Source: Girardia tigrina
Lineage: Eukaryota
Direction: 5' to 3'
Length of the DNA stretch: 64,000 bases
NCBI GenBank assembly: GCA_001938485.1
Contig: MQRK01170342.1
Location: 1-64,000 of the forward strand
The translations under genes were made by a program, and so were the position numbers. The notes under the pieces were generated by a model, which did no database searches, was not told the origin of the DNA, and saw only the letters and a list, made by a program, of their open reading frames with translations. Below are positions 18,447-64,000 of the stretch, in pieces (positions within the stretch are counted from its first letter, which is position 1; each line of letters starts with the position of its first letter).

Positions 18447-18511
18447 AACTTGACATATATTCATATTCCAATTGCGGTAGTCAGTGTCAATGATCCTCAT
18501 TATTTATTGAG
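18447..18511 (+). CDS. POMGNT1: POMGNT1-like exon D (start of catalytic domain)
   Basis: ttctag|...|gtaaaa; HIPIAVVSVNDPHYLLR resembles NVPVAVIAGNRPNYLYR; 65 nt, phase 0->2. Confidence 0.88.
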
Positions 18512-19714
18512 GTAAAATTAAATTTATTAATTTATTTAAAAATACATTAAATTAAAATTTTATAAAATTAAATAAATTGTATGATAAATTAAAAAATATA
18601 TTACTAAAAATTAAACCGGTAGTTACAAATCGACGAGACACTTCTTTGAGAAGAAAGCTTTTCTCATGTGGGTTTATTTTTCTTTTTTATTTTATATTTT
18701 ATTAGATTTTATGAGTTTAAAAAGAATCGAATAATTAATTGCAATTTTATTACTATTTTTATTATTATTTATTAATTTTTCTTTATAAAAAAGCTTGATT
18801 AATTGCTTAATAATAATTTTAACATGAAAATATTCTTTTTTTTAATATTTTAGAATTTTTTTACATATTTTAATTATTTTTAAACAGAAGTTTTGGTTAA
18901 GCGTCCTATTAAATTTTTTTTGATTTTTTAATAATGATTAATCGAAAAAATTTTCTTCATTTTGAAATATTTGAATAGAGTTAATAATTTTACATTTTTT
19001 ATTTAACTTTGAAATTTATTTATTTAGCTTTACTAAAGCTATTTATTAAAAATTTTTAAATTTTATAATTTCATAGTTTTTGGTGTTTTAATAATTAAAA
19101 TATTGAATGAGCGTAGAGTAAGCGTGATAGCATGGTTGCGGCGATGTCACGCTGGTGGGGCTTGGAAGGTTCTCAGTTAAATGAAGACAATGGTATTACC
19201 GATGGTAGAAGTTAATAAAAATAATGTCGTGACATGTACACTCGAAATCTGACAAATAGCATCGATCAATATCGAACCACTGTCACATCCTTTCCTTTGA
19301 CCTTCAGTGAAAGAGAATCATATTTGTAGACAGCATTATGATGAGTTAATTAGAGATTTTATAAACCAATCTATTCTTTTTGTAAAACGATTAAAAAAGC
19401 AGTTGATGCTGGTTCTTTAGTTTATACTGTAAAAAACTAATTTTACTGAATATCAGTTCAATAATCAAATGCAGCGTCTGATAATCTGTCTCACAGAGCG
19501 GTGGATAACGGAATACAAAGTAGGGTGACAATGACTCCATGATTAATCTTGCACTGTACCAATCAGTAACTTGAAAAAAGAAATTACTGTCATCATTTCA
19601 GATTATCTAAATAATCTCTCTCGTCGATTTTCACTTTCTCAAAGTGATCAAGAATTAAGTTAAAAGTCTATTCAGAAATTTTTATTTTGTTTAAGACAGT
19701 TATCACTTTTTAAC

Positions 19715-20126
19715 TTCAATATAGTCGTTAGCAGTGATTGGGTACGCCAGATCCCATGATTCCCGAAGTTAAGCATCTGACAACTGAGCAGGTACTTATT
19801 TGGGTGACTGATACGGAATTCGCAGTACTATTGAATTTTCAGGTCATATCAGGCAAGCAGGCTTCTAATATGTACCATGTAAACCTTTACTACTTGTCTC
19901 ATGGTCCAACATTTGGTGAATAAATCGACTCCCTCTCCCAGAGAAATCTGGGTGAAGAGTGAAAAATAGAGTAAGATGAAAAATAGTGAAGGATGAAAAA
20001 CAAAACCTGGCAAAGGGCGGATGAGCTCTTTGGAGCTAACGGCTATTCATATCCGGAGAGGAGATATGTGCCACCATGTAACATGCTTACTGACACACTC
20101 AAAAATATGCAAAACCAATATGCATG
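19715..20126 (+). mobile_element. 5S rRNA-derived SINE, copy 2 (diverged, 3'-truncated)
   Basis: CCGAAGTTAAGCA..GTACTTATTTGGGTGAC head; body shared with 995-1270 (GGATGAAAAACAAAACCT.GCAAAGGG.GGAT.AGCTCTTTGGAGC). Confidence 0.82.
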
Positions 20127-23019
20127 AACTCATAAAAGTTTAAAAGTTCGATGTTTTATGACAGTGGAAAGGAATGAGAGCTTCAAATATTGAAAATATT
20201 TTCTCCCAATTAAAGAGCTTTTCATGAAGTTTTTTCAAAAATTTTCAAGAAATATTTTCAAGAATTGTTCAATCTGCCCTGAAAAGAAAATTGACATCAC
20301 TTTTGTAATATTTATCGAAAATCGAACTATTAGAGAGGAAAAGGTATAAAGTCTCGATTTCCCACGACAGAGTCCCTAATCAGATACAATAACCAACGGG
20401 TTTCATGGAATTTTCTTTCAAATTGAATCTCTCAATGACTCCATCCACTCATTTTCAAGGCCTTGTTTAATCACCTTTCTCAATGATTCAAACGAATTCG
20501 AATCGGGCAACAGATCAGTCGTTATTTTACCGAATAAGACCTCAGATCACTTAATAGATTCTAAATAGATATATATGATGCTGATAAAGTCCGAGAAACA
20601 CCAATATTACCGAAAGATTTCTAGCAACGTTTATTCAAGAATTACCTCAATTCATTCATATATGTCATGAAGCGATAAAATTTTATTCTGATGTTATTAA
20701 AATTGATTCCGGCAACTATGTTTTACATACCTACAAATCAGCTGAATATTGTAAGACTAATATATACACTGAAGCTCTTTCTGACGCAGAAGAATGTACA
20801 AAATTGAAGTCTGATTGGGTCAAAGGATATTCTGCAGCTTTATAACACCTGGGTACAAAATCATGTCGTTTTTGTTCCTCCCCACGACCCATACCGGGGT
20901 GCCACGGCCGCTCTCTTATATACAGTCGTCATATAATAATCTTCTGATGATGAAAACTGCTGAGAAAGTCCATACACAGAGCGCTAAGTAGTTCTGGGAA
21001 TCATGATTCCAGCATGATCAGAAAAAAAAACACGTGCTAAGGGTCCATCAGTTCTTGACTATGCTCACGAGATAGATCAAGTGCACTAAAATATGATGTT
21101 GTATGAGCAAAACTTGTATGAGCAAAATCTTTGGATTCGGATTGTAAGGCTACAGAAGAGTAAACTAGACGACATCTTTGGCTAGAAAATGTGTTTTGAC
21201 GAATGAGTTTTTCTCGATAGATTTGATGAGGTATCTGTAAAGTGATCTTCTGATAAATATTTGAGAGCATTCATAACAGTCTCAAAAATTTAATAAATCG
21301 AATGAAGACATCATAATTTTAAATCTATCGAATTTTAGAGCTTCGATTTATTCTTCTCATATAGAAATGCTTTAAGAATATTGGCTGTTTTTGGAGAGAT
21401 TGAGAAATAGGTGCACAATTCCATACATGTTATTGAGAGAAGATATATATATATATACATATGCTTTAACGAGAGCGACGATTGAGATTGTGGCTGGTTC
21501 AATGCATGTAAATGGCTTGATGATGAATATCCCAAATTCGCTTTTTGAATGTTTCCAAAAAAATATTTCCAATACTAACACCATCGTAACGTTTTCTATA
21601 TTCTCCTATCAATACTAGTTTTTTTAGTTCCATTGTTATGATGTTAATTCCTTTGGCAGATCAATCTTCTAATTGGAAAAATTGAAGAAAGCTTTTCGTT
21701 TATTTAGTAAATTTTTAGTAAGGAAAATATTTTGAAAATATATCGTGGGGGATCGATCCCCCATATCCCCGTTAGCGACCAATATTTCTGTAAAAGAAAA
21801 TAAAATAAAAATAAATAAAATAGAAAACCAATTTCGTTCAAGTAAATTCTTTTTCTTTTATGTATTTCCATTATGAAAATAAACTCGTTTAATAAAACAT
21901 CAAACTATACTTTTATTGTAAATATAAAAGAAAAAATGTTATTTTTAAATGAAGCGTACTTTGATTTTATTACGTTTCTCTCAGATTACAAAAGATCTCA
22001 TATGACAGACATTTGAAAATAAAATTTACCTTGTTTAAACTAAAAGGAAAAAAAATAAAAAGTAATAATGGAAAGTATAAATAAAAGGAAATAGTTAAAA
22101 TGCTTTAAATAAGGTCTTTTATTTTATGTTTTAATGTATTTTAATTAATAAAAATTTCAATCAATAAATTATATTTTAATTTATATTATTTAAATTTTTT
22201 GAAGCGATAATTATTTTTTTTGATTTTTTCTTTAAAATACTTTTTTGTTTTTGTTAATAAAATGTTTTAACAAAAAATATTTGCTTATTTGACTACATAA
22301 AATAAAATAATAAATTGCATTTCCCATAATGTACATCTGCAACATAATATTTTGCGATGCTTACGTAATTCGATTATCAACCTCTAAGACTCATTGTTCT
22401 AACAGTCTCTATGTTTTCCAGAGACTTACTGTACACAGCAGATATTTGGTTTTCCTCGTGCTGCGCACATTTTTGAAATAATTGGTACCACATTGTCTTA
22501 TTTTTTTAACTTGCATTTTAGACTAAGTTTCTCTCACAAAAATTTAATTAAGTTAAAAAATTTTTACAAGCAAAAATCGTCAATTCGCGTTAATACAATT
22601 TCTTCAAATTTTCATATTGTCAACAAATTTCAAAATAGTCAGCAATATTTCAGATTCTGAACAAATATCAAGATTTTCAATAATAATTTAACCCTAAACA
22701 TGAAAATTTATTTAAGTGAGAAAAATTGAAATGACCGATCGGCTAGGTTGGTGCCTGGCCCGCACCCGAGCCTGTAGCCTGAAAGGAAATTTAAGCCCAT
22801 ACACATGCCCGTGTCCGTTTTTGGGTGCTCGTCTCAAAGACGGACCCAAGATAAATAATTGCTTTAACATCTCCCATTATGCATATATAACAGACCAGTA
22901 AATATATTTATACTTATATATACTTATAAATAATAATATTATTCTATAAACATAGACCTAAATGGATGGGAGGGGTTTGGATAGATGGGTTTGGATGAAA
23001 CAGAAAGGTTATATATATT

Positions 23020-25735: not shown

Positions 25736-26173
25736 NNNNNNNNNNNNNNNNNNNNNNNNNNNNNNNNNNNNNNNNNNNNNNNNNNNNNNNNNNNNNNNNN
25801 NNNNNNNNNNNNNNNNNNNNNNNNNNNNNNNNNNNNNNNNNNNNNNNNNNNNNNNNNNNNNNNNNNNNNNNNNNNNNNNNNNNNNNNNNNNNNNNNNNNN
25901 NNNNNNNNNNNNNNNNNNNNNNNNNNNNNNNNNNNNNNNNNNNNNNNNNNNNNNNNNNNNNNNNNNNNNNNNNNNNNNNNNNNNNNNNNNNNNNNNNNNN
26001 NNNNNNNNNNNNNNNNNNNNNNNNNNNNNNNNNNNNNNNNNNNNNNNNNNNNNNNNNNNNNNNNNNNNNNNNNNNNNNNNNNNNNNNNNNNNNNNNNNNN
26101 NNNNNNNNNNNNNNNNNNNNNNNNNNNNNNNNNNNNNNNNNNNNNNNNNNNNNNNNNNNNNNNNNNNNNGAAA

Positions 26174-28464: not shown

Positions 28465-28540
28465 GGTTATTTCAAGTTTGACCAACGTTAAAGGAATTCA
28501 TCCGAAAAATATAATTATATTTATTGATCAGAATTATGAA
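28465..28540 (+). CDS. POMGNT1: POMGNT1-like exon E
   Basis: ttttag|...|gtaagt; VISSLTNVKGIHPKNIIIFIDQNYE resembles [25 protein letters not shown]; 76 nt, phase 2->0. Confidence 0.92.
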
Positions 28541-29599
28541 GTAAGTCTCAAAATGTTTAAAGTTATATGATTGGTAATACTAATAATAGTAAAAATAATA
28601 ATAATAATAATAATTTAATACTGTCAATCAGACCATAACACTTTGTTAATATTATGGTTTATTTCATTTTCAAAAATATTACACCATTTATAAAATCGTA
28701 AAATTTAATTTTCAAACTAATTAAGGAACGCTTTTTAATTTTTATATACATTAATTTTAAATACTTTTAATTTAATTTAATACATTAATTTAACAAACTT
28801 TTCAATTAATACAGAAATCAACAAAAAATAAGATTAATTACTCTAATTAATTAAAAAAATTTTATCTATCAACAAATATAAATTGTGATTCTTAATTTAT
28901 AGGGTTGTAAAGAAATTCTTGTTCGATTTTAAAGCATGTAATAAAAAAAACATGATTATTTTAGGAATCATCATTTATAAAACATTCAAAATAGTTGTAA
29001 TGGTGAAATGCACGTTTTTGAATACCATATGTCAAGACCATTTAGGATTAGGCCCGAATCTAGAAATAAAAGCTTCCTAAATTTCTATGAAATTCCAAAT
29101 TTCTTCTTTCCAAATTATGTATTTTATGGATGATAATTAGTTTAAATTTGAGTAGAAAAAAAGAGAAATATGACGATGTTGCAATATAGAGAATCCAATG
29201 TGCTGCAGATTATCTAGTGTTTCATGAGCTAAATGTAGACTAAAGTTGCCTTACATGTATTGAAAAGGCTGGTAAAAACTTTGCACTTGATATCGCCGCT
29301 TCTTCTGAATCGCTTCATTGAGGTAATCAAGCTGTTTACTATAAAAGTCATCAGTGATGTTAGCCCTCGAAGTGGTACTTTAATTAACACATGGCTTGGT
29401 ATTTCAGAAACACTGGTAACTGGTACTTTCAAGGGGTGAAAACTCGGCAGAAGAATTTTTTTCAACTCTCCAGAATCCGTGAGGAAGATATCACGACAAA
29501 ACGCCATGGACAAAATGCAGAGAACAAAAGTGCCCAATTTAATAATTTAATTACTAAATTATTACTAACGAAGATTACTTATTAATAATATTTAACATC

Positions 29600-30071
29600 A
29601 ATATAAGCAGAAAAACAAGTTATAATCCACAATCAAATGGGAAAATCAAGAGATTCTATAAAGAACTAAATGAAGCACTAAGAACAGTATCAAACGATTC
29701 AAACCTGTTAGAAAAGTTACTAAAACATTATTGGTGTTGAGGTATAAATCACATGAGACCCAGAAATCTTCACTGACAAAACTGACGGGAATACAAATAA
29801 CATCAAAAATAATGGACAAACAATATAATACAAACCGAAAAACAAAGGATAACAATTTAGAAAATTGCAAAGCTTACGTCATGATTTCAAATACCATGAA
29901 CTTTAAAAACAAGTAGAAAGATCCATATGATATCAAAATGCTAAGCAACAACTGCGCACTATTAAATGTAGACGGTTAAAATACATTTGTTAATTGTAGT
30001 AGACTAAAATTAATAGAGAAATAATAGTTCCAATAACTCCCGTAAGGCAGGTGTAATGACCAATAACTCTG
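29600..30071 (+). mobile_element. Decayed Gypsy integrase C-terminus and start of 3' LTR
   Basis: RFYKELNEALRT; NK*KDPYDI...VDG*NTFVNCSRLK resembles the GPY/F module; AAGGCAGG then TGTAATG at ~30051. Confidence 0.6.
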
Positions 30072-30264
30072 NNNNNNNNNNNNNNNNNNNNNNNNNNNNN
30101 NNNNNNNNNNNNNNNNNNNNNNNNNNNNNNNNNNNNNNNNNNNNNNNNNNNNNNNNNNNNNNNNNNNNNNNNNNNNNNNNNNNNNNNNNNNNNNNNNNNN
30201 NNNNNNNNNNNNNNNNNNNNNNNNNNNNNNNNNNNNNNNNNNNNNNNNNNNNNNNNNNNNNTAT

Positions 30265-30311
<47 letters not shown>

Positions 30312-31199
30312 CTTTATTTTATCTATTTATTTTTCATGACACCAAAAAGATCTCTCTGGACCAGTACCAATTGTGAAGCGATTCATTAATCCGCTATCTC
30401 GAAATGGTAGGTCCCGGTAATATCGAACATAAATAACACATATAAATTAAAATATAATACAATAATAATTACCTGGCAATAGAAATAATAAAAAAAAGTA
30501 AAAATTTTAAATTTAAATATTAATATTTACAAAAGTTACTAATATTATTTTAATCATTTTCTGACTATAGGATTAATTTTTTTTCTTGCCCATTATCTCG
30601 ACTAAATTCTCGCTTGCTCCCAGAACAATTATTATCAGATATCACTTGAACATAATGATCCGCTATTATATGAATAAATATTTCCCAAAAGAAAAGTAAA
30701 ATTCAAAGAAAATATATATTTTCAAATTTATCAAATAAATCAATCAATATCATTCATATACAATCACTAGTTGAAGGTAGAAATTCATTAGCTCCGTATT
30801 ACTACAGACATTTCTCAAACAAGTTACCTAAACTTTACGTTTGAAGTATTAAATAATTTATTATACCTTTAATCTTTTCATAATCATTGACCTTCTTACT
30901 TCATCGGTCATTGTTACTTTTACTCTTCTTTTTATTTTTCCGTTATTAAAATGATTGTCAAATATAATTATTTTACCTTAACGAATTTTTTTCTTTTTTT
31001 TATAATATTTATTAAAAGGTAGCCTCGACGACATAAATCATTATCCATTTAGGTTACCTTTTACAATAAATACAGGTATAAACAAATATTATACAAACAA
31101 ATAATTCCTGTAACAATACTTATAATTAGTTAAAAATATATTAGATAAATCATATATTAAATTTCATTCACCATGGATATTCGCAACAGAGGTCATTAA

Positions 31200-31291
31200 C
31201 ACATTGAATGCTGAGTACGAGATATCTCGTACTTCAATATTCATTAGTTAGACGCTAAGTACGAGATATTTCGTACTCAGCATTCAATGTG
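31200..31291. mobile_element. 92-bp piggyBac-type MITE
   Basis: TTAA|CACATTGAATGCTGAGTACGAGATATCTCGTAC...GTACGAGATATTTCGTACTCAGCATTCAATGTG|TTAA; a second right end CAGCAGTCAATGTG|TTAA at ~31373-31390. Confidence 0.88.
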
Positions 31292-31564
31292 TTAAATGCT
31301 AAAAAGGCGCGGCAGTAAACTTTTTTGTCCCACGCGTAGCGCGCGTAGCAGACGTTCGGTGCATGATGTCAACAGCAGTCAATGTGTTAACATATTAGTA
31401 ACGGAGAAGACTTTCTTTACGCACTTGTATTTAACAATAAATTATAAAATTCAATTTATCAATTTATCAATTCAAGACTTATCACAAAAAAGAAAACAAA
31501 AAAAATCATGTTTTTTTTATATTTTCTTAATTTATTTTGTCTTTATTATTTATTTTCATTTAAG

Positions 31565-31696
31565 GAATCCAAACTAATTGTTGATCTTTTTAAACTAAAA
31601 CTAATTCGAGTTCGTCTTCAAAGTAACATTGATACATTATCAAAGGATTCTTACAAATTCAGAACTGCCATTGCAAATGCTTTTCGGCGCTTTAAT
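31565..31696 (+). CDS. POMGNT1: POMGNT1-like exon F
   Basis: tttaag|...|gtgagt; ESKLIVDLFKLK...YKFRTAIANAFRRFN resembles EPMDVVALFGLR...HYKASLTATFNLFP; 132 nt, phase 0->0. Confidence 0.88.
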
Positions 31697-32219
31697 GTGA
31701 GTTGTGTTATTTAATGCATTAGTCTACTTTTTTGTTTTATAAATACTAAATAAATTATTCCATCAAACGTATGAGTAAAAGTAGAAATGTATCAATAAAA
31801 TGGCCTTTGCATAATTAGATAAATTACTTTATTCTTATGAGACAGAGCATTGAAAACTAAATATATATTTAAGATACATTTGGCGTTTAAAAAGCATGTC
31901 TTAACAATACGAGATTCCTTTGTTTTTTTTAAATCGCAAATAAATGTTGTTTTGTCTTCAATTCGAGCAATACTTTATTGTCAAAGACATAATAGTTAAT
32001 TTCACGGCGAATTTTATATCTTTTACGATGAGAAATTTTTAAAAATATAATAATAAATAATTAAATAATTAAATTAAATAATAATTAAATAATTAATTAA
32101 ATAATTAAATAATATAATTTCATTTTATAATATATTTCGGATTTTATGATTACGGAAATATTTAAACAAAATAAAATTTTCATGAAAATTTGTTTTATAC
32201 ATTTTATTGGCTAATAAAT

Positions 32220-32430
32220 GTGTTTGGAACATCTCCAACATTATCGATATTGAAAGACGACATCGATTTTCAAGTTTTTAATAATCCAAAAATATACTAA
32301 TACTCTTTATTTAGACAAATTTAATCGAAATTAAATTCATTTATTATTTGTTTTAATTTTTTATAAACGATTTGTTTCATAAATCTCAAACCGGTATAAT
32401 AAAATAAATATAGTATTGATAATTCATTTT
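32220..32430 (+). repeat. Left arm of a ~210-bp inverted repeat pair
   Basis: Reverse complement of 35883-36095 (AAAGACGACATCGATTTT, CTCAAACCGGTATAAT). Confidence 0.85.
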
Positions 32431-33984
32431 ACCTTTTTTTATTTCACACGAATAAATAATTTAATTTTCTTTCAATAAACTTCCGAAATTTCTCAATTGT
32501 AACAAAACTTTATTTTACTTCTTGACTTTTTAAAATTTAAAATTCTACTTCTAATTCAACTATGATTTAAAAAATTTTTAAAACATTGCACCCGGGCCCA
32601 TCCAGAGGTGCACCCCCACAAGATCCGTCGAAAGGTGAAAACGTTGACGACTGTTTAATAGATTTAATTTTGTCTGGAATGTCTAACAAAATGTCTGTGC
32701 TCAATTCTGTCAGGTAGCTCGAGTTTCACATGCCTCACGAACCGATTTGTCTTTTCAATTTCCAGAACTGACGATTTTCTCAGAAACTTTCTCTAAAATT
32801 TCAACCCATTGTGAACCTTTCGTCATTCAATAGTCAAGTGATTGTGATGAGGAATCCATCGAGATTGTTCTGCACAAACAGTGCCGCTCTCTGACTACCA
32901 CAGCCGGATATCAATCGATATAATTCACTCATGAAATCAGCTGTCTCAATACAGATAATATTGATCTGTTTGACGATCGATCGATAATTACTTATTGTTA
33001 TTTGCAGATTTGAGAAATTTCGTTCATTAATTTGCAAATTAATTAAAATAAATTAAATTTTGATTAGAAAACAGTTTTATTCAAAAACGATTCGAAACAA
33101 ACATTTTCTAAAATTTTTTAACACATGCAAAATTAAATGCTACAATCATATTTGAATAAACGTTCCCAATTATGCGTTATTATATTAGTGTTCATTTGCA
33201 CTCTTTCACATTCATTATTTATTATTTTATCTTGTATGATGCTTATCACTACCAGTCTTGTAGTTTCATTAAAACAAATTGCATTAGTTATACACTGGAA
33301 GTTAATAATTCCTTTTGATCATTTGCCAGTATAAATAGTGAGCATCAACAGCACCTAGGAATTTTAATTCTTCAAAAGTTTATCAAAAAAAGTAATCACC
33401 ATATAGCCTGCAATCTTTGTATGTTTCAAAACAGAATAACAACTTGAAAAGTATACTTATTGCAACAGAAAGTTCATTACTAATAACAATCAATTACTAA
33501 TAAACAATCGTTATTTACTATCCTTTTCTTGATTTAGAATTTGTTTTGAAGGTCAAATATCCTTTTAGAATGACATAAAAATAAATGAGCCCACATTAGC
33601 CATCTCTGAATATATCAGTGGTATTTTTTTATGTGTCATGACAAAATGAAAGCATGTAGATACATCAAGCTCTATGTCCGCTTAAAAACACATCAACTTC
33701 AGTAATAACAATGATCCCTTGAACATTAAAAAAGTCCATCGGCGAAGTCCAGCTTACTTCAGGTACGGAATTCAATGTCCTTTTATGGGATCTCTGAATT
33801 GCACATTAATGATGATTCTGTAGAGATTTATAAGTACATCTCTATCTTGAAGGAGTAAGTTTAACTTAAGGCAGAAACATTTTTGACAATCGAGGTGAAT
33901 TTTACAATAAGAAAATAATTCTTTCATACATTTATTATTTATATTTTCTTTTCAAATAAAATCAATCAACAAATACATTTAGAA

Positions 33985-35040
33985 GTGGCTATAGCAAAAC
34001 AACAACTGGACAACAACCGAGGAGAGACGTGTGAAAGTTATGATCACTTTCTTTTCTCACATTGAACGGAAAAGCACTAGCTGGACCCACCCTGCGACAA
34101 AGAAGGGGGATCTTCTTGATTACTTCCTAGTGTATGCAAACAAACAAGATCTTCAATGCATTGCTCGCAATGTACTCTGGATATTCAACGATCCCGCAGA
34201 TTTAGCAGAATACAGGGAAAGTCTAAACGAAAGAGGGCTTCTCGACAATGATGAGGAATTTAAACACCTGATCAAAGGAAACATATCTGAGCGACTGAAA
34301 GAGGCAATCGAATATGAGAAAGAATGTCCGAAAATGCTTCAGCCGCGCATCAAAATATTAGCTTGCACATTCCCTTGTTGCTTTAAAGAATTTATTGAGC
34401 AGAAGGAACTTCCAAGACACATTAAGAATGTACATCTGGCCACGACGCCGACGACACAGAGAGGTGGTGGTTCATTCATATGTCCCATGGAGAACTGCCA
34501 CAAAACTTACAAAACTAATGGATGGCTACAACGACATTTATTAATTGATCGTCGAATCCAAGGTAATGGTACTACGAACATCCAAGTAGTGCAAAGAGAA
34601 GAAACAGAAAGACGTACTGGACCTTTGAACTTGAACGTGGAACATGATATACCAGTGTCTGTCGGTGTAACTGAGGAAGACTGTCCAAGAGTAATCCCTA
34701 AAGTGGTTCTGAATTTTCGGCTAGATAATATAACGGATAAGGGCTAGATAATATTGCCCATTTCCCCGTTGCACTAAGTGCGCTTATACAGCCAGAAGTC
34801 TTCAGAATCACGGAACGAAGGAACATTACTGGTCTTTTCTTAGAGGGAAGTCGAAGCGTGCCCGTGTATTGAAAGCTCGCACTCTTGCATCTGAAACCGT
34901 GTGAGAGGATCAGAAAACTTTGTATTTGTCAAATGATTTCTACCCGATACAGAGTCTATAATTCACTACCCTGTGCGCCAATGCTGAGTATTATTTGTAA
35001 TGTACAGTTATTCGTAACAGTCGGGGGAGGCTTATATGTA
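33985..35040 (+). mobile_element. Internally deleted RTE-like LINE: APE C-terminus fused to C2H2 zinc fingers
   Basis: ORF 34031-34747: TFFSH..KSTSWTHPATKK.DLLDYFLV (RTE APE motif), then CTFPCC..RHIKNVH and CPMENC..LQRH; a third finger CPFPRC..NHGTKEH follows a frameshift at a GGCTAGATAATAT duplication. Confidence 0.75.
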
Positions 35041-35882
35041 TTATAAAACAATAAGTCTTTTAGAGCACAAACCTGATTAAGCTACATTTCATATAGAAAA
35101 ATAAGATTTTGTAGAACATTGATGATATCAGAGCAATCATTGTAGCGCGGTCGCAAAAAACCAGATAATTCGGTCCATTTCTAGATTTAAAAATGTGATT
35201 GACTGATGAAATATAAATACGATTTCAACGCAATATATTCATCCATAACATAAACTAGTGCAAGAAGTACACAAAATATAAACAAATAAAAAAATTACCT
35301 GTTTCAAATTTTCAACAAAAGTTATTTTCAATAAAATCGTTTTGCCTTTATCCAATACGTGAAATAGCAAAAGAAACATTGCACTTATTACCATAAAACT
35401 TGATACAATTATCATAAATCCACTGACAACAGCTTAAGACCAAAAGATTGAGTGAATTTTCAATTAGTTTCAGTGACAGTTTTCTATTTCGATTATTGAC
35501 ACTTTTAGGTGAGTTTTCCATTTCGTCAAACGGCTCGTTCGAGGACGAAGCTCAGTTCTCCACACACCAAATTAGCCGAATCTCCAAAAAATTGACAAAT
35601 TGCAAAGTATGTGTACCAAACTTGTTTTTACCATGATACCACGTATTAACTATATCAAGGAAGTTACAGTTGATACCCCATCATATTAATTTATAATAAA
35701 TGTTAAGAAATTTTAGAAAATAGTTTAAAAAGTTTTGAAATTATAGTTAAATTAAGAGTAGATTTTTAAATTTAAAAAATTCAAGAAGTAAAATAAAGCT
35801 TATATTAAGCATGTTAAATTCCAGAAGTTTATTAAAAGAATATGAAATTATTTAATTGTGGGAAATTAAATGAATTATAAAT

Positions 35883-36095
35883 AAATGAATTATCAATACT
35901 ATATTTATTTTTATTATACCGGTTTGAGATCTATGAAACAAATAGTTTCTCAAAATCAAAAAAACATAAATAAATTTAATATCGAATGAATTTGTTTAAA
36001 TAAAGAGTATTAGTGCATTTATTTGGATTAATAAAAACTTGAAAAATCGATGTCGTCTTTTAATCACGATAATGTGGAAGATGTTCCAAATGCAT
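35883..36095 (-). repeat. Right arm of a ~210-bp inverted repeat pair
   Basis: Reverse complement of 32220-32430. Confidence 0.85.
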
Positions 36096-37356
36096 CTGAC
36101 AGTAAATAAAACTTACTTTTAAAAATTCTTTTATTCTTTTCTCAATTTTTTTTCAAGTTCAAAACGTTATTTTTAACAGCATTTATTAATATAACTTTTT
36201 AATTATCAAAATATAAATAAAAAATAACAAAAAATAATCAAATCTTCTTAATTTTTATTTTATTTATATTTTCAATTTGAAATTACAGAAATAAAGAAGA
36301 GCTATTGATATGTTTTTTTTGTAAAAAAAATGAAAATATAATATATTCTTTTCTCATTTCTTTTATATTTCTTTTGTTAGCTTAATCAATTAAAACAAAT
36401 TACAAAGTGCAAAATTGTGGAAAAATATGGAATTTCACTTTGATTGAGATATATTGTAAATTCCCCAATTAGACGTCTGGGAGTCAAAGCAGATGACGAA
36501 AATTTCCATTCAATTTTTTTAAAAAAAGTTGTTTCATTTTCTTCAGACTTACCAAAATTTAAAATGTTCAATTAAACAACAATAAAACAAATTGCGACAG
36601 TTTTTTTAATCTTAATTATAGAATAAAATTATATGTCATATTTGTCTGTTAATTATAAAGTTATATAAACACGCAATAAATTTTATTTTTTGTTTACATA
36701 AAAATTTATAAGATTTCTTTAATTAATTTTATTATTATTATTATTAATTAAATATTTTATTTTATAATTTATACAATAAATTTCTATTATTAATTTTAAA
36801 TTATAATAAAAAAATAAAATAAAATATTTAATTAATTTATTATTATTATTAAATAAATATTTTATTTTATTTTTATTATAATTTGAAATTATTAACAGAA
36901 ATTAATTGTTTATAATTCGAAAATAATCTTCTATTGAGAATTTAATAATTAATGTTTTTTTTTCAAAATTGATTATATATTTATTTCAATATTAAATTTC
37001 AATTGGGATCTTAAAAATATAATTTAGATTAAATAAAATAAACCCAATTAAATTTGAAGTTCTTGTTAATTATTTTTCCCAGCATCATCCATCAAAGGAG
37101 AAATTGTTTTCTTTTAATTCCCAAAATGATACCCGGTTCAATGAAGCCAAAAAAAAGAAACTATTAATTTTTTAAAATTTTAATTCACTTAATAAAAATC
37201 ATTTTTTTCTTACGATAAATATTCATTTTTGTTAAAAAAATTTTTTCATAATTCTTTATTATTTGTTTGATTTTTACCGTTTTTATTTTACAGATATTTT
37301 AAATGTTTTTATTGAAATTAAGATTTTTGTATGTCTTCCCTTTTTATTTTTTTATA

Positions 37357-38636
37357 TATGGTTGGTCGAAAAATAATGACGGTTTGTGAGCTTTATACTT
37401 TGTTTATCTACTTTGATATGTATATAAGTTTAAATGCATTAGTGTTAGATATTATTTGTAATCTTATGCCCAGCTGTATATTCCTATAGCCATTATTAAC
37501 ATATTGCTGTTATTTTTTAGAATATTTACGGTGCTAAATTAATAATAGAAAAAATTAAAATTCGAGCAATTTTCTTGTACGTATTTAAACTGAGTCGTAA
37601 AGCAGCAGAAACGGCTCGCAATATCAATAAAGCGTTTGGCAAGGGAACAACTTCTGAGTGCAAAGTGCAACGATGGTTCCGAAAATTTTCTGATGGAGAT
37701 GAAAACCTTGAAGATGAAGAAGGTCGTGGTCGTCCAGTTACTGTGAACAACAACAATTTGAGGACAATGGTGGAAACAGATCCCCGTACAACAATCAGAG
37801 AACTTGCAGATGGGTTGGGCATTAGTCATTCAACAATCCTGGATCCTTTAGAACAACTTTGAAAAATCAAGAAACTTGATAAATGGGTTCCACATAATTT
37901 GAATGAAAATCAAAAGAACCTGCGCTATGAAATTTGTTATGCCAATCATCTTCGCAATAAAAACGATACATTTTTTTATCGTATTGTTACCTGTGATGAG
38001 AAATGGATCCTGTATGATAACCGACGTCGATCTGCACAGTGGTTGGACAAAGATGAAGTACCGAAACACTTTCCAAAACCGAAACTAACACCCCGTAAGG
38101 TTATGGTGACAGTTTGGTGGTGTGATGCTGGAATCATCCACTATAGTTTCTTGGATCCAGGTGAAACAATCACAGCGGAGAGGTACTGTCATGAAATTGA
38201 TGAAATGCATAAAAAATTGAAAACCCTTTGTCCGGGATTGGTCAATCGAATAAGTCCCATCCTTCTTCATGATAACGCTAGACCTTATATTTCAAAAGTG
38301 ACTTTTCAAAAGCTTAATGAGTTGAGCTATCCTCCACCACATATGGTTCATCCATCATATTCACCAGACGGACTTCTACTTTTACAGGCATTTGTTCAAC
38401 TTCCTACGTGAAAACAATTTCAAAAACGAAGATGATGCTCAAAATGCCTTCCAAGAATTCGTCGCTTCGAGAACCAATGCATTTTATGCTGATGGAATAA
38501 AACAACTTGTTTCTCGTTGGCAAAAATGTATTGATGCCAACAGTTCATACTTTGATTAATAAACTTTTGTTTCTGTGAATTGACACGTCTTTGAAGTTTG
38601 TGTCCCAAAACCGCCATTATTTTTCGACCAACCTAA
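37357..38636 (+). mobile_element. Full-length mariner (cecropia/Hsmar1-like), transposase pseudogene
   Basis: 1280 bp, TA flanks, TIR GGTTGGTCGAAAAATAATG.CGG; WVPHNL, TCDEKW, HDNARP, YSPD motifs; stop at 37860-37862 and a frameshift after YSPD. Confidence 0.95.
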
Positions 38637-39104
38637 TATTTTTTTTTATAATTTAGTTTAAATTAATATGTTGACCAAAGGTAATTTTTATGTTTTGAAA
38701 TTTTGATATAAAACATAAATTATTATTATTTTAGTAATTTTTAAAAATAAAATTACTCAAAGTTCTTAAAAGATAAAATGTTTAAATTTATCTATAATAT
38801 TTATATTTTTATATTTTTATTATATATAAAAGTGATTGAATAACATTCTGCAACAATGTTAAAGAGAGGCTCGTTTGAAAATTTATCAATATTATTTCAC
38901 CATTTTAAATATGTAAAACTGCCCAATATCTACACATATCCGATCTACAGACTTAATTTACGTGTTTAGCAAATATTAAAATGAACCCCTCCTCTAACGA
39001 GTTTGCTCAAAAATCCGTTTACAGAGATGCTGACCTTATTTTGTTATGCTAGAGATTAAAAAATCATTATTGTCATTTTAAAAGAATAAAACACATTTTA
39101 CATG

Positions 39105-39335
39105 ATATTGAGTGCATAAGTTCCTGCGACTTTATTTGTTGCAAAGAAAACACACAAACTTCTTGTTTAAACTGATTTGAGTTATATTCAGCTAAAGACG
39201 AACTTTCACTTTCATAACCTTCCTTAAAATGGAGTGTAAGATAAATAAAATCATTTAATCAACAAAAGCCACCAGAATGATTTGTTGCGTTTATGGAGAA
39301 AAGGAAATCAGTGAACAAACAGGATAAAATGGCTT
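39105..39335 (+). mobile_element. Mariner 5' fragment
   Basis: TATTGAGTGCATAAGTTC TIR-like start; KATRMICCVYGEKEISEQT resembles a mariner N-terminus. Confidence 0.6.
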
Positions 39336-40329
39336 TTATGATCTCATAGAACGATTCTGTTTTCCATATGATTCAGTGACGATATCAGAAAACTTTCACA
39401 CATCTCGAATTAGACATCTTTCCTGGTTGTTACAATTTCCTTCGCAGATGCAAATTCAAAATGTGGTGAATAAATACGTTTATTTAATAACCCTTGTTAT
39501 TCAGCATATTGTTTACAAAAAATAAGATCTTACGTTATAAATTACCATATATTTTTCCTAGATCTACGGATAAATTGTCACTCATTTATATATTATTTTT
39601 AGAACAGTATCAGTCTATTCGCAACTTTTAGAGTTAAAATCATTCTTATGACATCGAGAAGGAATATTTCTGAATAATTACTTTAATTTTTCATTGAACA
39701 TTTTCGTTTTTATACTATTATAATTTAGATTATGTTTGAAACTTCTAGAAAATCATTTTTATATAGAATACTCCGTCTACTTCATGGCTTTGACATGGTA
39801 TGATAAACTTATTCAGCTCCTGGAATCTCATTTTAAGTTTTACCATTCCAAACCGGTCGATAATTTGCCTTACTTCTTCATAAGAATTTTCATTGCAAAA
39901 AATAACTCTTGAAATAACTAGACATTTATAGTTTTGATTCTGAGTTCATGATAGAAGAATGTCTGTTTTTCTGTTTGTTCCTTATTAACTCAAAAACTAT
40001 CAAAACAACTGCAACTAAACTTTGGAAAATTGTTGTAATTATCTTCGAGATGGTTTCTGTTTAAAAAAAATTAATAAAAATTAATTTTGCAATATTTTTC
40101 CAATTATTTGGACAGTTTGCCAACCCTAGGGATATATTACAGCGGTGATATGGATACGCAACTGGGATGAAAAAATTATGGACTTTATTTTGGTATCAGT
40201 CTCGTTGCCATTGGATTGAAAATCATTTATCGATTTTTTTTATTTTTTTGCATATCGAGTTAAATTTAAAAAGCACTATTGTCAAGGGAATGACCTCCGT
40301 CCCCGTTGATTATCAATTTGGATTTCTTT

Positions 40330-40630
40330 TTACTCGCTGAGAGAAAACAATTTCAAAGGTATATGGTTTTCACCTATGTGACACTCCATTTATCGCCGTA
40401 TCCCAGAATTCGTCCGTTTTCAGTTCCACCAGAGATTTTCACCACGGTTTCGAATTTCAAGGATCAATTCAGATTAATAGGAGTGGATTGTCTTTAAATA
40501 CTCGTAAATAAAATAATATTTGGGGTATGTACGTTGCTTGACCAAGAGTGGAAACCAGAAAATGATTATATGTTTATGTACCGCGTAGAAAATGCAAAAA
40601 CATTGTATGGACAACAACTTTGCAATTAAA
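40330..40630 (+). mobile_element. Helitron PIF1-helicase C-terminal remnant
   Basis: Frameshifted RIRPFSV..TT..KDQFRLIGVD / GMYVA*PRV..LYVY..KCKNIVW resembles RxQFPV..KSQGQ..GQLYVAxSRV..TKNIVY. Confidence 0.65.
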
Positions 40631-40921
40631 AGTTTGATTTCACTCTATTTTGCTGAAAATGATCCTAAATTAATATTACCAAAGAAAAGATTAGAAGTTG
40701 AACGACAAAACTGAAGAGTATTTTACATTAATATCAATCAAGAACATTTAAAGACATGAGTTGCGATGTATTTTTGGCCTTAAAACATGTCTTATCTTAC
40801 TGCCTTAATCATCGGATACCTCTGTTAGTTTAATAATCAAGATAATCTTTGATCAATGATATAATGTTAACACAATATATTAATTTGACTTTTTTACGAA
40901 TTTATTCCTTATTTATTTCAG

Positions 40922-41053
40922 TTTGCTCAATATGCAATAATCATGGAAGATAATGTTGACTCTTCTGTTGATCTTTTACATTATTTCAATCAAACCATTC
41001 AATTTGTTAAGAACCAGTCGAAAATCTTTACAGTTTCTGCATCCAGCAATCAA
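40922..41053 (+). CDS. POMGNT1: POMGNT1-like exon G (DxD-motif exon)
   Basis: tttcag|...|gtaaat; AQYAIIMEDNVDSSVDLLHYFNQTIQFVKNQSKIFTVSASSNQ resembles [43 protein letters not shown]; 132 nt. Confidence 0.92.
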
Positions 41054-55270: not shown

Positions 55271-55850
55271 TGTAAGAAATTTAAAAAATAATGGCAAATT
55301 TTTATTATAATCAAGAACACCATTAAAATCAAATTTTATTGTCGCAATATATTTCGGTGGATTTTCCACTATCTTCAGTCTGAATTAACAACAATTTCGC
55401 TGTCTTATATATAGAAAATTGATGATTGTGCAAAATCTTGCGTAATAACTAATTAAATATTTTCAATAAATTGGAAGAGAGACTTGTTTGTACATTAATG
55501 GACGGATTAAGTGATTTAATCAATAATGCCTCACAAGTGACTCTTTCCCAATAATTTTTAAAATTACTGCACAATATTTTAAAATTAGTTGTTTTCACCT
55601 CTGATTCGCTCATCAACATCAAATCTTCATTTTTTGTTTAATGATAATTGGTATAAACAGGTAGATGGTGTTGCCATGGGTTCCCCTTTGGCACCAACAC
55701 TTGCATCCATTTTTCTGTCTAACATTGAAAATAAAATTCATTTGTTTACGGATGTTAGACCTTTAGCTTATAAACTATATTTTGATGATATTTTTCTTGT
55801 TTTCAAAGAGCGTGAAAATATGTTGCCGTTTTTATCTTATATGAATTATA
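55270..55850. mobile_element. Penelope-like element with inverted 3' piece
   Basis: Minus 55270-55587: NFKILCSNFKNYWERVTCEALLIKSLNPSIN..F* plus terminus; plus 55589-55850: RT core YKQVDGVAMGSPLAP..YFDDIF. Confidence 0.92.
55342..55382 (-). ncRNA. Minimal hammerhead motif (degenerate stem I)
   Basis: CUGAAGA-u-agugg aaaau ccacc-GAAAU-AU-AUU. Confidence 0.55.
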
Positions 55851-55929
55851 TATGTGATTATATATATATATATGTATGATTTATATATATATATATATAT
55901 TATTGAGTCTTGTGAACGCAAGTTTAGTA

Positions 55930-56806
55930 TTTCGAAAATATAATTTGATTAAAGCTTTTTTTTATACAACTATTGGACATGTTTCGATGTTTATATACAT
56001 NNNNNNNNNNNNNNNNNNNNNNNNNNNNNNNNNNNNNNNNNNNNNNNNNNNNNNNNNNNNNNNNNNNNNNNNNNNNNNNNNNNNNNNNNNNNNNNNNNNN
56101 NNNNNNNNNNNNNNNNNNNNNNNNNNNNNNNNNNNNNNNNNNNNNNNNNNNNNNNNNNNNNNNNNNNNNNNNNNNNNNNNNNNNNNNNNNNNNNNNNNNN
56201 NNNNNNNNNNNNNNNNNNNNNNNNNNNNNNNNNNNNNNNNNNNNNNNNNNNNNNNNNNNNNNNNNNNNNNNNNNNNNNNNNNNNNNNNNNNNNNNNNNNN
56301 NNNNNNNNNNNNNNNNNNNNNNNNNNNNNNNNNNNNNNNNNNNNNNNNNNNNNNNNNNNNNNNNNNNNNNNNNNNNNNNNNNNNNNNNNNNNNNNNNNNN
56401 NNNNNNNNNNNNNNNNNNNNNNNNNNNNNNNNNNNNNNNNNNNNNNNNNNNNNNNNNNNNNNNNNNNNNNNNNNNNNNNNNNNNNNNNNNNNNNNNNNNN
56501 NNNNNNNNNNNNNNNNNNNNNNNNNNNNNNNNNNNNNNNNNNNNNNNNNNNNNNNNNNNNNNNNNNNNNNNNNNNNNNNNNNNNNNNNNNNNNNNNNNNN
56601 NNNNNNNNNNNNNNNNNNNNNNNNNNNNNNNNNNNNNNNNNNNNNNNNNNNNNNNNNNNNNNNNNNNNNNNNNNNNNNNNNNNNNNNNNNTTATTAAAAT
56701 TGTGAAAAATTGTATTATTCAAACAATTCAATAGAAAATTGCTGATGATGATGTATATAAACATCGAAACATGTCCAATAGTTGTATAAAAAAAGCTTTA
56801 ATCAAA

Positions 56807-59634: not shown

Positions 59635-59750
59635 CGGTACGGGGACACTTAATTCCAAAGACACTTGATCCCGAAGACACTTGATCCCGGGTACATTTGA
59701 TCATAATTTCATTTAATCCTGAAGACACTTGATCCCGATGACATTTAATA
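59635..59750. mobile_element. Orphan MULE-type TIR
   Basis: About 6 degenerate ~16-bp GACACTTGATCCCGA units, the same layout as the 14925 TIR. Confidence 0.55.
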
Positions 59751-60034: not shown

Positions 60035-60605
60035 TTGGGTTTGCCAAAAAGTCATTGCGTTTTTTACTAAAATATTTATTATCAAAAAATGACATGGATG
60101 CACAAATATTTTTACACTATATACTGTACATTATTTTCAATCACTTTCCTCCACCTTTCCGGTAGCTTCATTATTCCTGATTCATAAAAACCTTTGCCTT
60201 TGTCAGTAAAAAAGCCGTCTAGGAACGATTTGATGTCATCATCACTGGCGAACGTTTTTCTGTTTAAGAAATTCTGCAGTGATCTAAATAAGTGAAAATC
60301 CGATGGGGCCAAGTCTGGAGAATACGGTGGGTGCGGCAAAACCTCCAAACCCAGTGATAAGAGTTTCTGGCGAGTGGTCAAACTTGTATGCNNNNNNNNN
60401 NNNNNNNNNNNNNNNNNNNNNNNTTTTCGATTTGCCAATTCAGGACGTTCCTGTTGAATTGAATGAGCCAATTTCTCCAGCTGACCACAATATCTGTCTG
60501 AATTGATGGTTTCATTCCTCGGAAGGAGTTCAAAAAACACAATTCCTTTAAAATCCCACCAGACGGAAAGAATAACCTTCTTTTGGTGAATTTCTCCTTT
60601 TGGGA
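60035..60605 (-). mobile_element. Mariner (mellifera-like) 3' remnant
   Basis: TA|TTGGGTTTGCCAAAAAG TIR; KKVILSVWWDFKG..HPPYSPDLAPSDFHLFRSLQ..GIMKLPERW. Confidence 0.92.
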
Positions 60606-60963: not shown

Positions 60964-61089
60964 TATTATTGTTCCAAATCCTTTCAAAAAGAAACTTATT
61001 TGAGCGAATATATTCCGGACACCACATTTATGATAAGTCGAGTATTGTGGCAAAACGAATTAAGCCTTTATTGGCCGGACAATCTAGGG
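60964..61089 (+). CDS. POMGNT1: POMGNT1-like exon H
   Basis: ttttag|...|gtatta; TYLSEYIPDTTFMISRVLWQNELSLYWP resembles [28 protein letters not shown]; 126 nt. Confidence 0.88.
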
Positions 61090-61909: not shown

Positions 61910-61911
<2 letters not shown>

Positions 61912-61967
<56 letters not shown>

Positions 61968-61990
61968 TTAGTATTATTATTATTATTATT
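61912..61990. repeat. (AAT)n microsatellite followed by (ATT)n
   Basis: Direct read. Confidence 0.95.
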
Positions 61991-63419: not shown

Positions 63420-63849
63420 AAAAATTAAAAAAACTGCCTTTCAAAGGGCTAGACGAGTGAAGTGGATTCAAACATATGGATTGAGTTTGACAAAGTCCGG
63501 ATTGCAACCCTTTGCAATCTTTGGATGGATTTGAAAAAAACAAGGTCTGAGCTCACTGCCTTAGAACAATTTCAGAATCGAAAACCACCATTACTAATGT
63601 AAGGCATAATGAAATAACACTACAATACTGCGACATTTTGTTATGCTCAATGCCAATGAGACTGAAGTCTGTCATCCACAACAGGGGATTCCCCACAAAA
63701 TATTGACTTGCATGCAATGCAGACATATTCCTGTTCTTATATTTTTGATATTCCACCTTTATTGTTACTGCATTCAGTATTTTTTTCATTCATTATTATG
63801 GAAATACATGTTTTCCCCATTGTGTCAATTAATTAAGTTTCCCCCACTG
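63420..63849 (+). mobile_element. Tc1-like 3' remnant
   Basis: SPDCNP..LWMDLK..CSMPMRLKSVI..GFPTKY*; right end CCCCCACTG|TA. Confidence 0.8.
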
Positions 63850-63947
63850 TATTTTGGATTAAGAAATCGTCATTTATTATTTAGTAGGAAGAAATATTAG
63901 AGAATTGAATTTTTACAAATAAAAGTTTCTTATTTTTATATTTTAAG

Positions 63948-64000
63948 GATAAGTCATGGAAAAAATGGTTCCAAGACTTCATGATCAAATCCGGCCGGTA
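63948..64000 (+). CDS. POMGNT1: POMGNT1-like exon I (runs to window end)
   Basis: ttttaag|gat; DKSWKKWFQDFMIKSGR resembles LWDWDMWMRMPEQRRGR. Confidence 0.8.

What the first reader, a model, noticed from the sequence alone, without database searches (positions are those of the whole stretch)
18447..64000. POMGNT1-like gene that looks like a maintained pseudo-glycosyltransferase
Seen: the spliced frame is open with clean splice sites and no stops, while the surrounding TEs are full of stops. Known: GT13 enzymes (POMGNT1, MGAT1) use the NRP arginine and the EED/EDD motif for UDP-GlcNAc/Mn2+, conserve SAWND and PGLGW, and carry the catalytic Asp in WDxW. Here these read NDP, EDN, SASSN, PDTTF and WKKW, yet the Cys-rich linker (RRRLC..VEGY..LCSC) is well conserved. 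Inference: a catalytically dead paralog kept as a lectin, scaffold or regulator, or an enzyme with changed chemistry.
Basis: partly seen in the sequence, partly recalled or inferred. Interest (0 to 1): 0.8.

Follow-up and report, generated by a model that had tools for sequence, protein, structure and literature searches.

The report
Dead-site POMGNT1 gene in flatworm-like genome
This is the only relative in this genome of POMGNT1, a sugar-adding enzyme of the dystroglycan pathway; all its recognisable catalytic motifs have been replaced while six exons stay open and spliceable, so it was probably kept for a non-enzymatic job, but expression and a complete gene are unproven.

Summary
Six plus-strand exons (window 10583 to contig 64118) are the six best matches, in order, to a profile built from 25 real POMGNT1 proteins. 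All six are open, have AG/GT splice sites and agree in phase.

In ungapped, well-anchored alignments NRP reads NDP, EED reads EDN, SAWND reads SASSN, PGLGW reads PDTTF and WDWDMW reads SWKKWF. An invariant His is also replaced by Tyr. These residues are invariant in 64 to 110 POMGNT1s from sponge to vertebrates.

It is not a paralogue beside a normal copy. The assembly holds no other POMGNT1-type locus, and the other GT13 genes are canonical MGAT1-type. POMT1/2, which make POMGNT1's substrate, were not detected.

The substitution pattern and open frames argue that selection kept the reading frame while the active site was replaced.

The gene model is incomplete:
- no stem (lectin) domain was found;
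- one internal exon is missing (an assembly gap may hide it);
- there is no recognisable C-terminal third.

No RNA or orthologue evidence could be obtained.

Verdict: probably a pseudo-glycosyltransferase derived from POMGNT1 (about 0.5), with a late-stage relic as the main rival (about 0.3). The scan holds no note of this outside this stretch.

The parts
10583..10716 (+). Exon E1: Cys-rich linker (..CPNWPDSERNRARRRLCRLVEGYSSLCSC..). It begins with 2 nt of a split codon, so an upstream exon is implied.
   Evidence: PDB POMGNT1 5GGF E 1.9e-6. POMGNT1 profile positions 139-172, E 2e-8. Single copy in the genome. Acceptor tatcag|, donor |gtaatt.
18447..18511 (+). Exon E2: start of the GT-A domain, IPIAVVSVNDPHYLL(R). 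NRP reads NDP.
   Evidence: 56% identical to Cryptotermes POMGNT1 VPVAVIASNRPHYLYR. Shuffle z 8.6. Profile 183-201. Arg is present in 109/110 homologues.
28465..28540 (+). Exon E3: (R)VISSLTNVKGIHPKNIIIFIDQNYE. Its phase fits E2 (AG+G gives Arg).
   Evidence: The best PDB hit is POMGNT1 chain 224-254, E 0.16. Profile 199-233, E 7e-5. Donor |gtaagt.
28541..40921 (.). Interval where coding sequence for profile positions 234-265 (..FGLRGIQHTP..QHYKASL..) is expected but was not found. It contains the assembly gap 30072-30261 and TE remains.
   Evidence: No hit by tblastn with real POMGNT1s, by profile search on either strand, or by splice-constrained enumeration.
40922..41053 (+). Exon E5: FAQYAIIMEDNVDSSVDLL..FTVSASSNQ. 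The DxD motif EED/EDD reads EDN and SAWND reads SASSN. The invariant Cys is Thr.
   Evidence: Pfam GNT-I 195-231, E 1.4e-4. PDB POMGNT1 and rabbit GnT-I alignments. Profile 266-312, E 1.6e-9.
60964..61089 (+). Exon E6: ..YLSEYIPDTTFMISRVLWQNELSLYWPDNLG. PGLGW reads PDTTF. The donor |gtatta is weak.
   Evidence: Profile 323-352, E 0.13, anchored by Y, E, P, EL and WP. Shuffle z 3.4 against own-genome MGAT1 exons. No PDB hit on its own.
63948..64000 (+). Exon E7 (start): DKSWKKWFQDFMIKSGR.. It continues in the contig to 64118 (L013:48-218), ..YCLYPLVSRVFYFGRQ..QLNP, and is then followed by TAA (or by a CC|gtaaga donor). The catalytic-base Asp is Lys, and the His of YHFG is Tyr.
   Evidence: Ungapped alignment to rabbit GnT-I FWDDWMRR..SRTMTFG. 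Pfam GNT-I 278-308. Profile 358-388, E 0.0015.

Best explanation
The locus is this (probably flatworm) genome's single descendant of POMGNT1. The enzyme's job, adding GlcNAc to O-mannose, became obsolete. That fits with POMT1/2, which make O-mannose, not being detectable in the assembly. The donor, metal and catalytic-base residues were then replaced. The Cys-rich linker and the structural skeleton of the first GT-A subdomain stayed under purifying selection. The product would be a non-catalytic Golgi-lumen protein. My inference is that it acts as a scaffold or chaperone for other glycosylation proteins, in the way POMGnT1 assists fukutin or COSMC assists T-synthase. Shown here: the homology, the motif replacements, the open frames, the single-copy status and the non-uniform retention of invariant residues. 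Inferred: that it is expressed today, where it sits in the cell, its partner, and its N- and C-termini.
For: Six colinear open exons with intact splice sites and consistent phases. Motif replacements sit in ungapped, well-anchored alignments. The replaced residues are invariant in 64-110 POMGNT1s from Placozoa, Porifera and Cnidaria to vertebrates. The third DxD Asp binds Mn2+ (PMC11065688), and Trp290/Asp291 of MGAT1 are the GlcNAc contact and the catalytic base (PMC7948508). At 43 invariant codons at least 28 nucleotide changes occurred. If those changes were neutral, about 11 stop codons would be expected in the 231 codons, P(none) about 2e-5. Invariant columns inside the five motifs are kept in 4 of 14 cases, against 21 of 29 outside them (Fisher p 0.009). 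The non-motif invariants are kept more often than the mid-conserved columns predict (p 0.005). Exon GC is 0.34-0.40 at all three codon positions against 0.28 in introns, like the intact MGAT1 genes. No other POMGNT1-type locus exists in the genome. PMT/POMT was not detected, while GT49, LicD and DAG1 exons were found by the same method. POMGnT1 has a documented non-catalytic helper role (PMC8478517), and COSMC is a precedent for a dead GT-A kept as a chaperone (PMC7185993).
Against: No orthologue from another flatworm could be retrieved, so there is no dN/dS. The gene model is incomplete: no stem domain, one internal exon missing and no C-terminal subdomain. Only intact exons are detectable by my method, so the no-stop statistic carries survivorship bias. 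Retention relative to canonical homologues is roughly similar (0.43-0.59) across most conservation classes, which looks partly like general relaxation. Overall identity to the consensus is 40% against at least 59% in 57 canonical homologues. The E6 donor is weak.
Confidence: 0.5

Rival explanations
1. It is a unitary pseudogene in late decay. POMGNT1 lost its purpose when O-mannosylation was lost. The 5' (stem) and 3' (C-terminal) parts and one internal exon have already gone, and the six middle exons are simply the ones that still look intact.
For: Stem domain, profile positions 234-265 and positions 389-527 are undetectable. Downstream of E7, by eye only, there are POMGNT1-like remnants (..CFLEEDFRHFIRMEYG then a stop; SDRFFWAFRGNQ then a stop) in conflicting frames. 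Divergence is far beyond any canonical homologue. There is no expression evidence. PMT was not detected.
Against: There are zero stops in 231 codons where about 11 are expected at the divergence seen at invariant codons. All 12 splice dinucleotides are intact and the phases are consistent. Non-motif invariant residues are retained significantly better than motif residues and than mid-conserved columns, which uniform decay does not predict. Exon GC3 has not relaxed to the intron level. The 3' remnants have no statistical support (negative bit scores).
Confidence: 0.3
2. A canonical POMGNT1 exists but is missing from this fragmented assembly (255,254 contigs). The locus would then be a diverged duplicate.
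For: The assembly is highly fragmented and gapped. POMGNT1 exons are tiny, so some could escape six-frame searches.
Against: The 44-residue linker exon is highly conserved and easily detected, yet the exon itself, a vertebrate POMGNT1 fragment and a 20-sequence profile all find only this locus. The same searches readily find all the MGAT1-type exons.
Confidence: 0.08
3. It is still an enzyme with altered chemistry, for example metal-independent or using another donor or acceptor.
For: Glu of the DxD motif and Trp of the WD pair are kept. Some GT-A families work without DxD by using basic residues (PMC7185993), and two Lys residues appear at the former base position.
Against: The catalytic base, the metal-binding Asp, the NRP Arg and the SAWND and PGLGW loops are all replaced together, and the C-terminal subdomain is absent. 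An inverting GT-A still needs a base.
Confidence: 0.05

Closest known systems
POMGNT1 (GT13; human structures 5GGF/5GGG/5GGI)
   Same: It has the Cys-rich linker RRRxCxxVEGYxSxCSC. Its exons are colinear with chain positions 163-192, 224-254 and 295-336. It is 40% identical to the family consensus over 178 columns. The tiny-exon gene structure is also shared.
   Different: NRP, EED, SAWND, PGLGW, WDWDMW and the His of YHFG are all altered. No stem/ILEI domain and no C-terminal subdomain were found. Divergence is far greater than in the sponge or placozoan orthologues.
MGAT1 / GnT-I (GT13)
   Same: It has the same GT-A core. E5 and E7 align without gaps to rabbit GnT-I around EDD and WDDW.
   Different: The genome has its own canonical MGAT1-type genes with large exons and intact EDD, SAWND/SAFND, PGLGW and WDD/WDE motifs. 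The window gene carries the POMGNT1-specific linker and lacks the catalytic residues.
COSMC (C1GALT1C1, GT31 pseudo-glycosyltransferase)
   Same: It is a GT-A homologue that has lost both the DxD motif and the catalytic-base motif yet is kept as a gene (PMC7185993).
   Different: COSMC is a paralogue that acts as chaperone for its active sister, T-synthase. Here there is no active sister of the same subfamily and no known partner.
CERCAM/CEECAM1 (inactive GLT25D homologue)
   Same: It is an animal GT-A protein that resembles an active enzyme but is inactive in assays (PMC3244457, abstract as listed).
   Different: It belongs to a different family (GT25), and its inactivity has been shown experimentally. 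Nothing here has been assayed.
Caenorhabditis state of the dystroglycan pathway
   Same: It is an animal lineage lacking POMT1/2 in which the downstream O-mannose enzymes lost their usual role (PMC8478517).
   Different: In Caenorhabditis the 'POMGnT1' match is only a FAM3-like stem-type domain protein. Here the opposite part survives: linker plus a dead GT-A core.

Membership tests
POMGNT1 lineage of GT13 | POMGNT1-specific Cys-rich linker between the stem and catalytic domains | tested here: met
   E1 matches human POMGNT1 at E 1.9e-6 and POMGNT1 fragments in the 1.8-billion-protein library. All Cys residues are kept.
POMGNT1 lineage of GT13 | GNT-I (PF03071) catalytic domain above Pfam's gathering score | tested here: inconclusive
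Exon by exon, E5 scores 21.3 bits and E7 12.2 bits against a cut-off of 25.4. A POMGNT1-specific profile gives six colinear hits.
POMGNT1 lineage of GT13 | ILEI/PANDER-like carbohydrate-binding stem domain | tested here: not met
   There is no PF15711 hit in the whole genome and no hit to profile positions 1-138 on the contig or in the genome. Tiny or diverged exons, or exons on another contig, cannot be excluded.
Active GT13 glycosyltransferase | DxD motif (EED/EDD) with a metal-binding third Asp | tested here: not met
   It reads E-D-N. Asp is present in 97/97 homologues. The role of this Asp is taken from PMC11065688.
Active GT13 glycosyltransferase | Catalytic-base Asp after the conserved Trp (MGAT1 W290-D291; POMGNT1 WDWDMW) | tested here: not met
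   Trp is kept and Asp is replaced by Lys. Asp is present in 64/64 homologues. The role of this Asp is taken from PMC7948508.
Active GT13 glycosyltransferase | Invariant NRP Arg, SAWND loop and PGLGW loop | tested here: not met
   They read NDP, SASSN and PDTTF. The canonical residues occur in 109/110, 94/95 and 84-85/86 homologues respectively.
Active GT13 glycosyltransferase | C-terminal subdomain (about 140 residues after YHFG) | tested here: not met
   No profile match to positions 389-527 on either strand of the whole contig.
Pseudo-glycosyltransferase (maintained dead GT, COSMC-like) | Homologue of an active GT with the catalytic motifs lost | tested here: met
Pseudo-glycosyltransferase (maintained dead GT, COSMC-like) | Purifying selection or expression of the dead copy | tested here: inconclusive
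   Indirect support only. No RNA and no orthologues for dN/dS.
Pseudo-glycosyltransferase (maintained dead GT, COSMC-like) | A defined non-catalytic function or partner | not testable with these tools
   This needs interaction or knock-down experiments.

The most novel reading that the evidence does not exclude
After flatworms lost POMT-dependent O-mannosylation, they kept a truncated, catalytically dead POMGNT1 (linker plus first GT-A subdomain) as a dedicated non-enzymatic Golgi factor. It might, for example, organise the strikingly expanded LicD/fukutin-like transferases of this genome. That would be the first pseudo-glycosyltransferase of family GT13, and a natural separation of POMGnT1's scaffold role from its enzyme role.
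Probability: 0.15. Interest if true: 0.75.

Novelty: new variant of a known kind. Interest (0 to 1): 0.5.

Why it matters
POMGnT1 is a human muscular-dystrophy gene with two proposed roles: making core M1 glycans, and acting non-catalytically as a helper for fukutin. A lineage that kept the protein while destroying its active site, and that apparently lacks the O-mannose substrate altogether, would be a natural experiment. It would isolate the non-catalytic role and add GT13 to the short list of glycosyltransferase families with pseudoenzymes. If the locus turns out to be a decaying relic, it still documents how the dystroglycan O-mannose pathway was dismantled in flatworms. I found no paper on this. 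A search for POMGNT1 plus planarian returned no papers, and two flatworm glycogenome papers mention neither POMT nor POMGNT.

Tried and rejected
- **RNA evidence.** The look-up of sequencing runs listed no RNA holder, only runs sharing at most 0.07 of the words.
- **Word search with exon E7.** No candidates.
- **Exhaustive phmmer with the linker exon.** It returned only vertebrate-type POMGNT1 fragments and two spurious Cys-rich proteins, with no flatworm relative.
- **Stem domain.** Not found with Pfam ILEI, a vertebrate fragment, a 20-sequence profile, or local tblastn and hmmsearch. A tblastn hit at 6653 has no acceptor site and is preceded by a stop, so I rejected it.
- **Missing exon for profile positions 234-265.** I tried HMMs built from the genome's own MGAT1 paralogues, tblastn, splice-constrained enumeration and a minus-strand search. 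None gave a credible hit. The candidate at 29239-29322 lies in TE-like sequence and was rejected.
- **C-terminal remnants.** The 'FIRME' and 'SDRFFWAFRGNQ' stretches I saw by eye have no statistical support. I keep them only as a remark.
- **Short exons alone against PDB.** No hits.
- **Structure papers.** The POMGnT1 and GnT-I structure papers are not held.
- **Organism name.** It could not be established. There are only other agents' 'flatworm' notes and a Platyhelminthes-dominated nearest Atlas cluster for the MGAT1-like exon.
- **Joined model.** All searches were exon by exon, by reference.
- **Assembly gaps.** They were not filled.
Full report
**Setting**

The window is positions 1-64000 of a 74,872-base contig. 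The assembly is 1.43 Gb in 255,254 contigs with about 27% G+C. Other agents' notes call the genome a flatworm (unverified). The nearest ESM-Atlas cluster of one of its MGAT1-like exons is dominated by Platyhelminthes, which agrees modestly with that.

**Is the observation there?**

A six-frame motif scan puts all the quoted strings on the + strand:
- RRRLC/VEGY/LCSC at 10627-10680;
- SASSN at 41036;
- PDTTF at 61015;
- WKKW at 63957.

Reading the DNA gives these exons:

| Exon | Coordinates |
|---|---|
| E1 | 10583-10716 |
| E2 | 18447-18511 |
| E3 | 28465-28540 |
| E5 | 40922-41053 |
| E6 | 60964-61089 |
| E7 | 63948 to contig 64118 |

- Every acceptor is a pyrimidine-rich ...ag.
- The donors are gtaatt, gtaaaa, gtaagt, gtaaat and gtatta.
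- E7 ends either at an in-frame TAA or at a CC|gtaaga donor.
- Phases agree at every junction I could check: E1 to E2, E2 to E3 (AG+G gives Arg), E5 to E6, and E6 to E7.

**Getting real references**

The exons are too short for the length-limited word search. The one exhaustive search, run with the linker exon, returned only POMGNT1 fragments.

I walked from one such fragment (P0006, from a frog) to longer ones. That gave more than 200 POMGNT1 sequences from Trichoplax, a sponge, Nematostella, molluscs, arthropods, a sea urchin and vertebrates.

I built a local profile from 25 of them (527 positions) and searched it against all 2629 open + strand segments of the contig.
- The six exons came out as the six best hits, in colinear order.
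- Their E-values run from 1.6e-9 to 0.13.
- The minus strand, used as a control, gives nothing better than E 1.8.

Independent support comes from several other searches:
- PDB hits to human POMGNT1 for E1, E3 and E5, and to rabbit GnT-I for E5 and E7.
- Pfam GNT-I matches for E5 and E7 at colinear model positions.
- tblastn with individual POMGNT1 proteins.
- Shuffle tests.

**The motifs**

The alignments are ungapped and anchored by many identical invariant residues. The table compares the window with 64-110 homologues.

| Canonical motif | Window reads | Key residue in homologues |
|---|---|---|
| iiasNRPnyLyr | VVSVNDPHYLLR | Arg 109/110 |
| ileeDLd | IMEDNVD | third-position Asp 97/97 |
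| CisawndQ | TVSASSNQ | Cys 95/95; W, N, D 94/95 |
| mPGLGWll | IPDTTFMI | 84-85/86 |
| dWDMWmr | SWKKWFQ | Asp 64/64 |
| tyHFG | VFYFG | His 64/64 |

The literature I could read gives roles for some of these residues:
- The third residue of the DxD motif binds Mn2+ (PMC11065688).
- In MGAT1, Glu211 and Trp290 contact GlcNAc and Asp291 is the catalytic base (PMC7948508).

In the window, the Glu and the Trp are kept, while the metal-binding Asp and the base are gone. Equating PGLGW with the generic glycine-rich donor loop of GT-A enzymes is my own inference. A working inverting, Mn-dependent GT13 enzyme is very unlikely.

**Paralogue or orthologue?**

Three genome-wide searches find only this locus as POMGNT1-type: the linker exon, a vertebrate POMGNT1 fragment and a 20-sequence POMGNT1 alignment.

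The other GNT-I loci (contigs C242755, C252273, C211351, C227046 and others) differ in three ways:
- They have large exons.
- They carry canonical EDD, SAWND/SAFND, PGLGW and WDD/WDE motifs.
- They score 172-174 bits to rabbit GnT-I against 45-50 bits to POMGNT1.

They are therefore MGAT1-type, and the window gene is the lineage's only POMGNT1 descendant.

**Pathway context**

The same six-frame family search gives these results for the pathway:
- The PMT domain of POMT1/2 is not found. The best E-value is 7.8, and PMT_4TMC reaches only E 0.13.
- Small exons of a GT49 (LARGE/B4GAT1-type) gene are found.
- DAG1-like exons are found.
- There are 58 LicD-type hits.

Absence from a fragmented assembly is not proof. 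Still, it offers a rationale: without POMT there is no O-mannose for POMGNT1 to extend. Caenorhabditis is a published precedent for an animal without POMT1/2 (PMC8478517).

**Maintained or decaying?**

*Evidence for maintenance*

1. At 43 columns that are at least 98% invariant, the window differs at 18, which needs at least 28 nucleotide changes.
   - If these changes accumulated neutrally, the divergence is at least 0.286 per site.
   - That implies about 198 substitutions in the 231 codons, and 5.5% of single changes would create a stop.
   - About 11 stops are therefore expected and none is seen, giving P about 2e-5.
   - All 12 splice dinucleotides are also intact.
2. Retention is not uniform.
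   - Invariant columns inside the five a-priori motifs are kept in 4 of 14 cases, against 21 of 29 outside them (Fisher p 0.009).
   - The non-motif invariants are kept more often than the retention of mid-conserved columns (0.47) predicts (p 0.005).
   - All the linker cysteines, the prolines and most tryptophans are kept.
3. Exon G+C is 0.395/0.335/0.343 at the three codon positions, against 0.278 in introns. This resembles the intact MGAT1 genes.

*Evidence against maintenance*

1. Only intact exons can be found by my method.
2. The protein is an extreme outlier.
   - It is 40% identical to the consensus, against at least 59% in 57 canonical homologues.
   - It keeps 25 of 43 invariant columns, against 36-43 of 43 in the canonical ones.
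   - Retention relative to canonical sequences is broadly similar (0.43-0.59) across most conservation classes.
3. The model is incomplete.
   - No stem domain was found.
   - No coding sequence for profile positions 234-265 was found between E3 and E5. The 190-N gap at 30072-30261 could hide it, and I did not fill it.
   - Nothing is recognisable for profile positions 389-527.
   - Downstream of E7 I saw, by eye only, POMGNT1-like strings in mutually inconsistent frames with stops. These are not statistically supported.
4. No RNA evidence could be obtained. No RNA run holds the stretch.

**Assembly gaps**

All six gaps lie inside introns. Profile positions are contiguous across the introns that hold the gaps at 25736-26169, 28176-28303, 41838-42598, 46143-46192 and 56001-56690. 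No coding exon is therefore missing there, and order and orientation across these gaps agree with the protein. Only the E3-E5 interval is open to doubt.

**Conclusion**

The motif observation is right and is now backed by profile alignments.

The best reading (about 0.5) is a POMGNT1-derived pseudo-glycosyltransferase. Its reading frame and structural skeleton were kept under selection while the active site was dismantled, in a genome that seems to lack POMT. Its present function is unknown, and I favour a scaffold or chaperone role by analogy with POMGnT1-fukutin and COSMC (PMC8478517, PMC7185993).

The main rival (about 0.3) is a relic now decaying from both ends.

That step and structure prediction are left for later work.

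I found no published description of a dead GT13 or POMGNT1, and nothing on POMGNT1 in planarians. Two flatworm glycogenome papers mention neither POMT nor POMGNT.

Noticed in passing
window 880-994 (+); similar element near 19738-20140: Rfam 5S_rRNA match (52.4 bits, full length) that heads a SINE-like repeat. A second diverged copy in the E2-E3 intron gives very similar translated ORFs.
   Followed up: partly
window 37521-38408 (+): Mos1/mariner-type transposase remnant (HTH_48 at E 2e-16, Transposase_1 at E 5e-27) inside the E3-E5 intron. Another mariner-like ORF lies on the minus strand at 60112-60540.
   Followed up: partly
L013:3086-5390 (contig 66986-69290, + strand): An integrase-like ORF is followed by two intronless partial host-type ORFs in tandem. 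One is a Sec1-family fragment (Pfam E 1e-32, model positions 69-388 of 575) and the other is a PRMT C-terminal subdomain (E 7e-27). They look like host gene fragments carried by a retroelement, as another agent noted elsewhere in this genome.
   Followed up: no
whole genome G000: There are at least 58 LicD-family (fukutin/FKRP-type) hits, many in 100-400-residue open frames. This is a large expansion.
   Followed up: no
whole genome G000: No PMT-domain (POMT1/2) match better than E 7.8. Exons of GT49, DAG1 and LicD genes were detected by the same method. The genome may have lost classical O-mannosylation.
   Followed up: partly
G000:C37680:2026-2637 (L004/L020): One of the MGAT1-type loci matches GNT-I strongly (E 1e-55) but contains five stop codons. 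It is a likely MGAT1 pseudogene alongside at least three intact-looking MGAT1-type loci.
   Followed up: no
window 33995-34744 (+): A 250-residue open frame with weak C2H2 zinc-finger matches, inside the E3-E5 intron. Its origin is unknown.
   Followed up: no
window 55589-55876 (+) and 53081-53266 (+): A reverse-transcriptase fragment (RVT_1, E 8e-7) and a weak IS66-type DDE match (E 5e-5), both in the E5-E6 intron.
   Followed up: no
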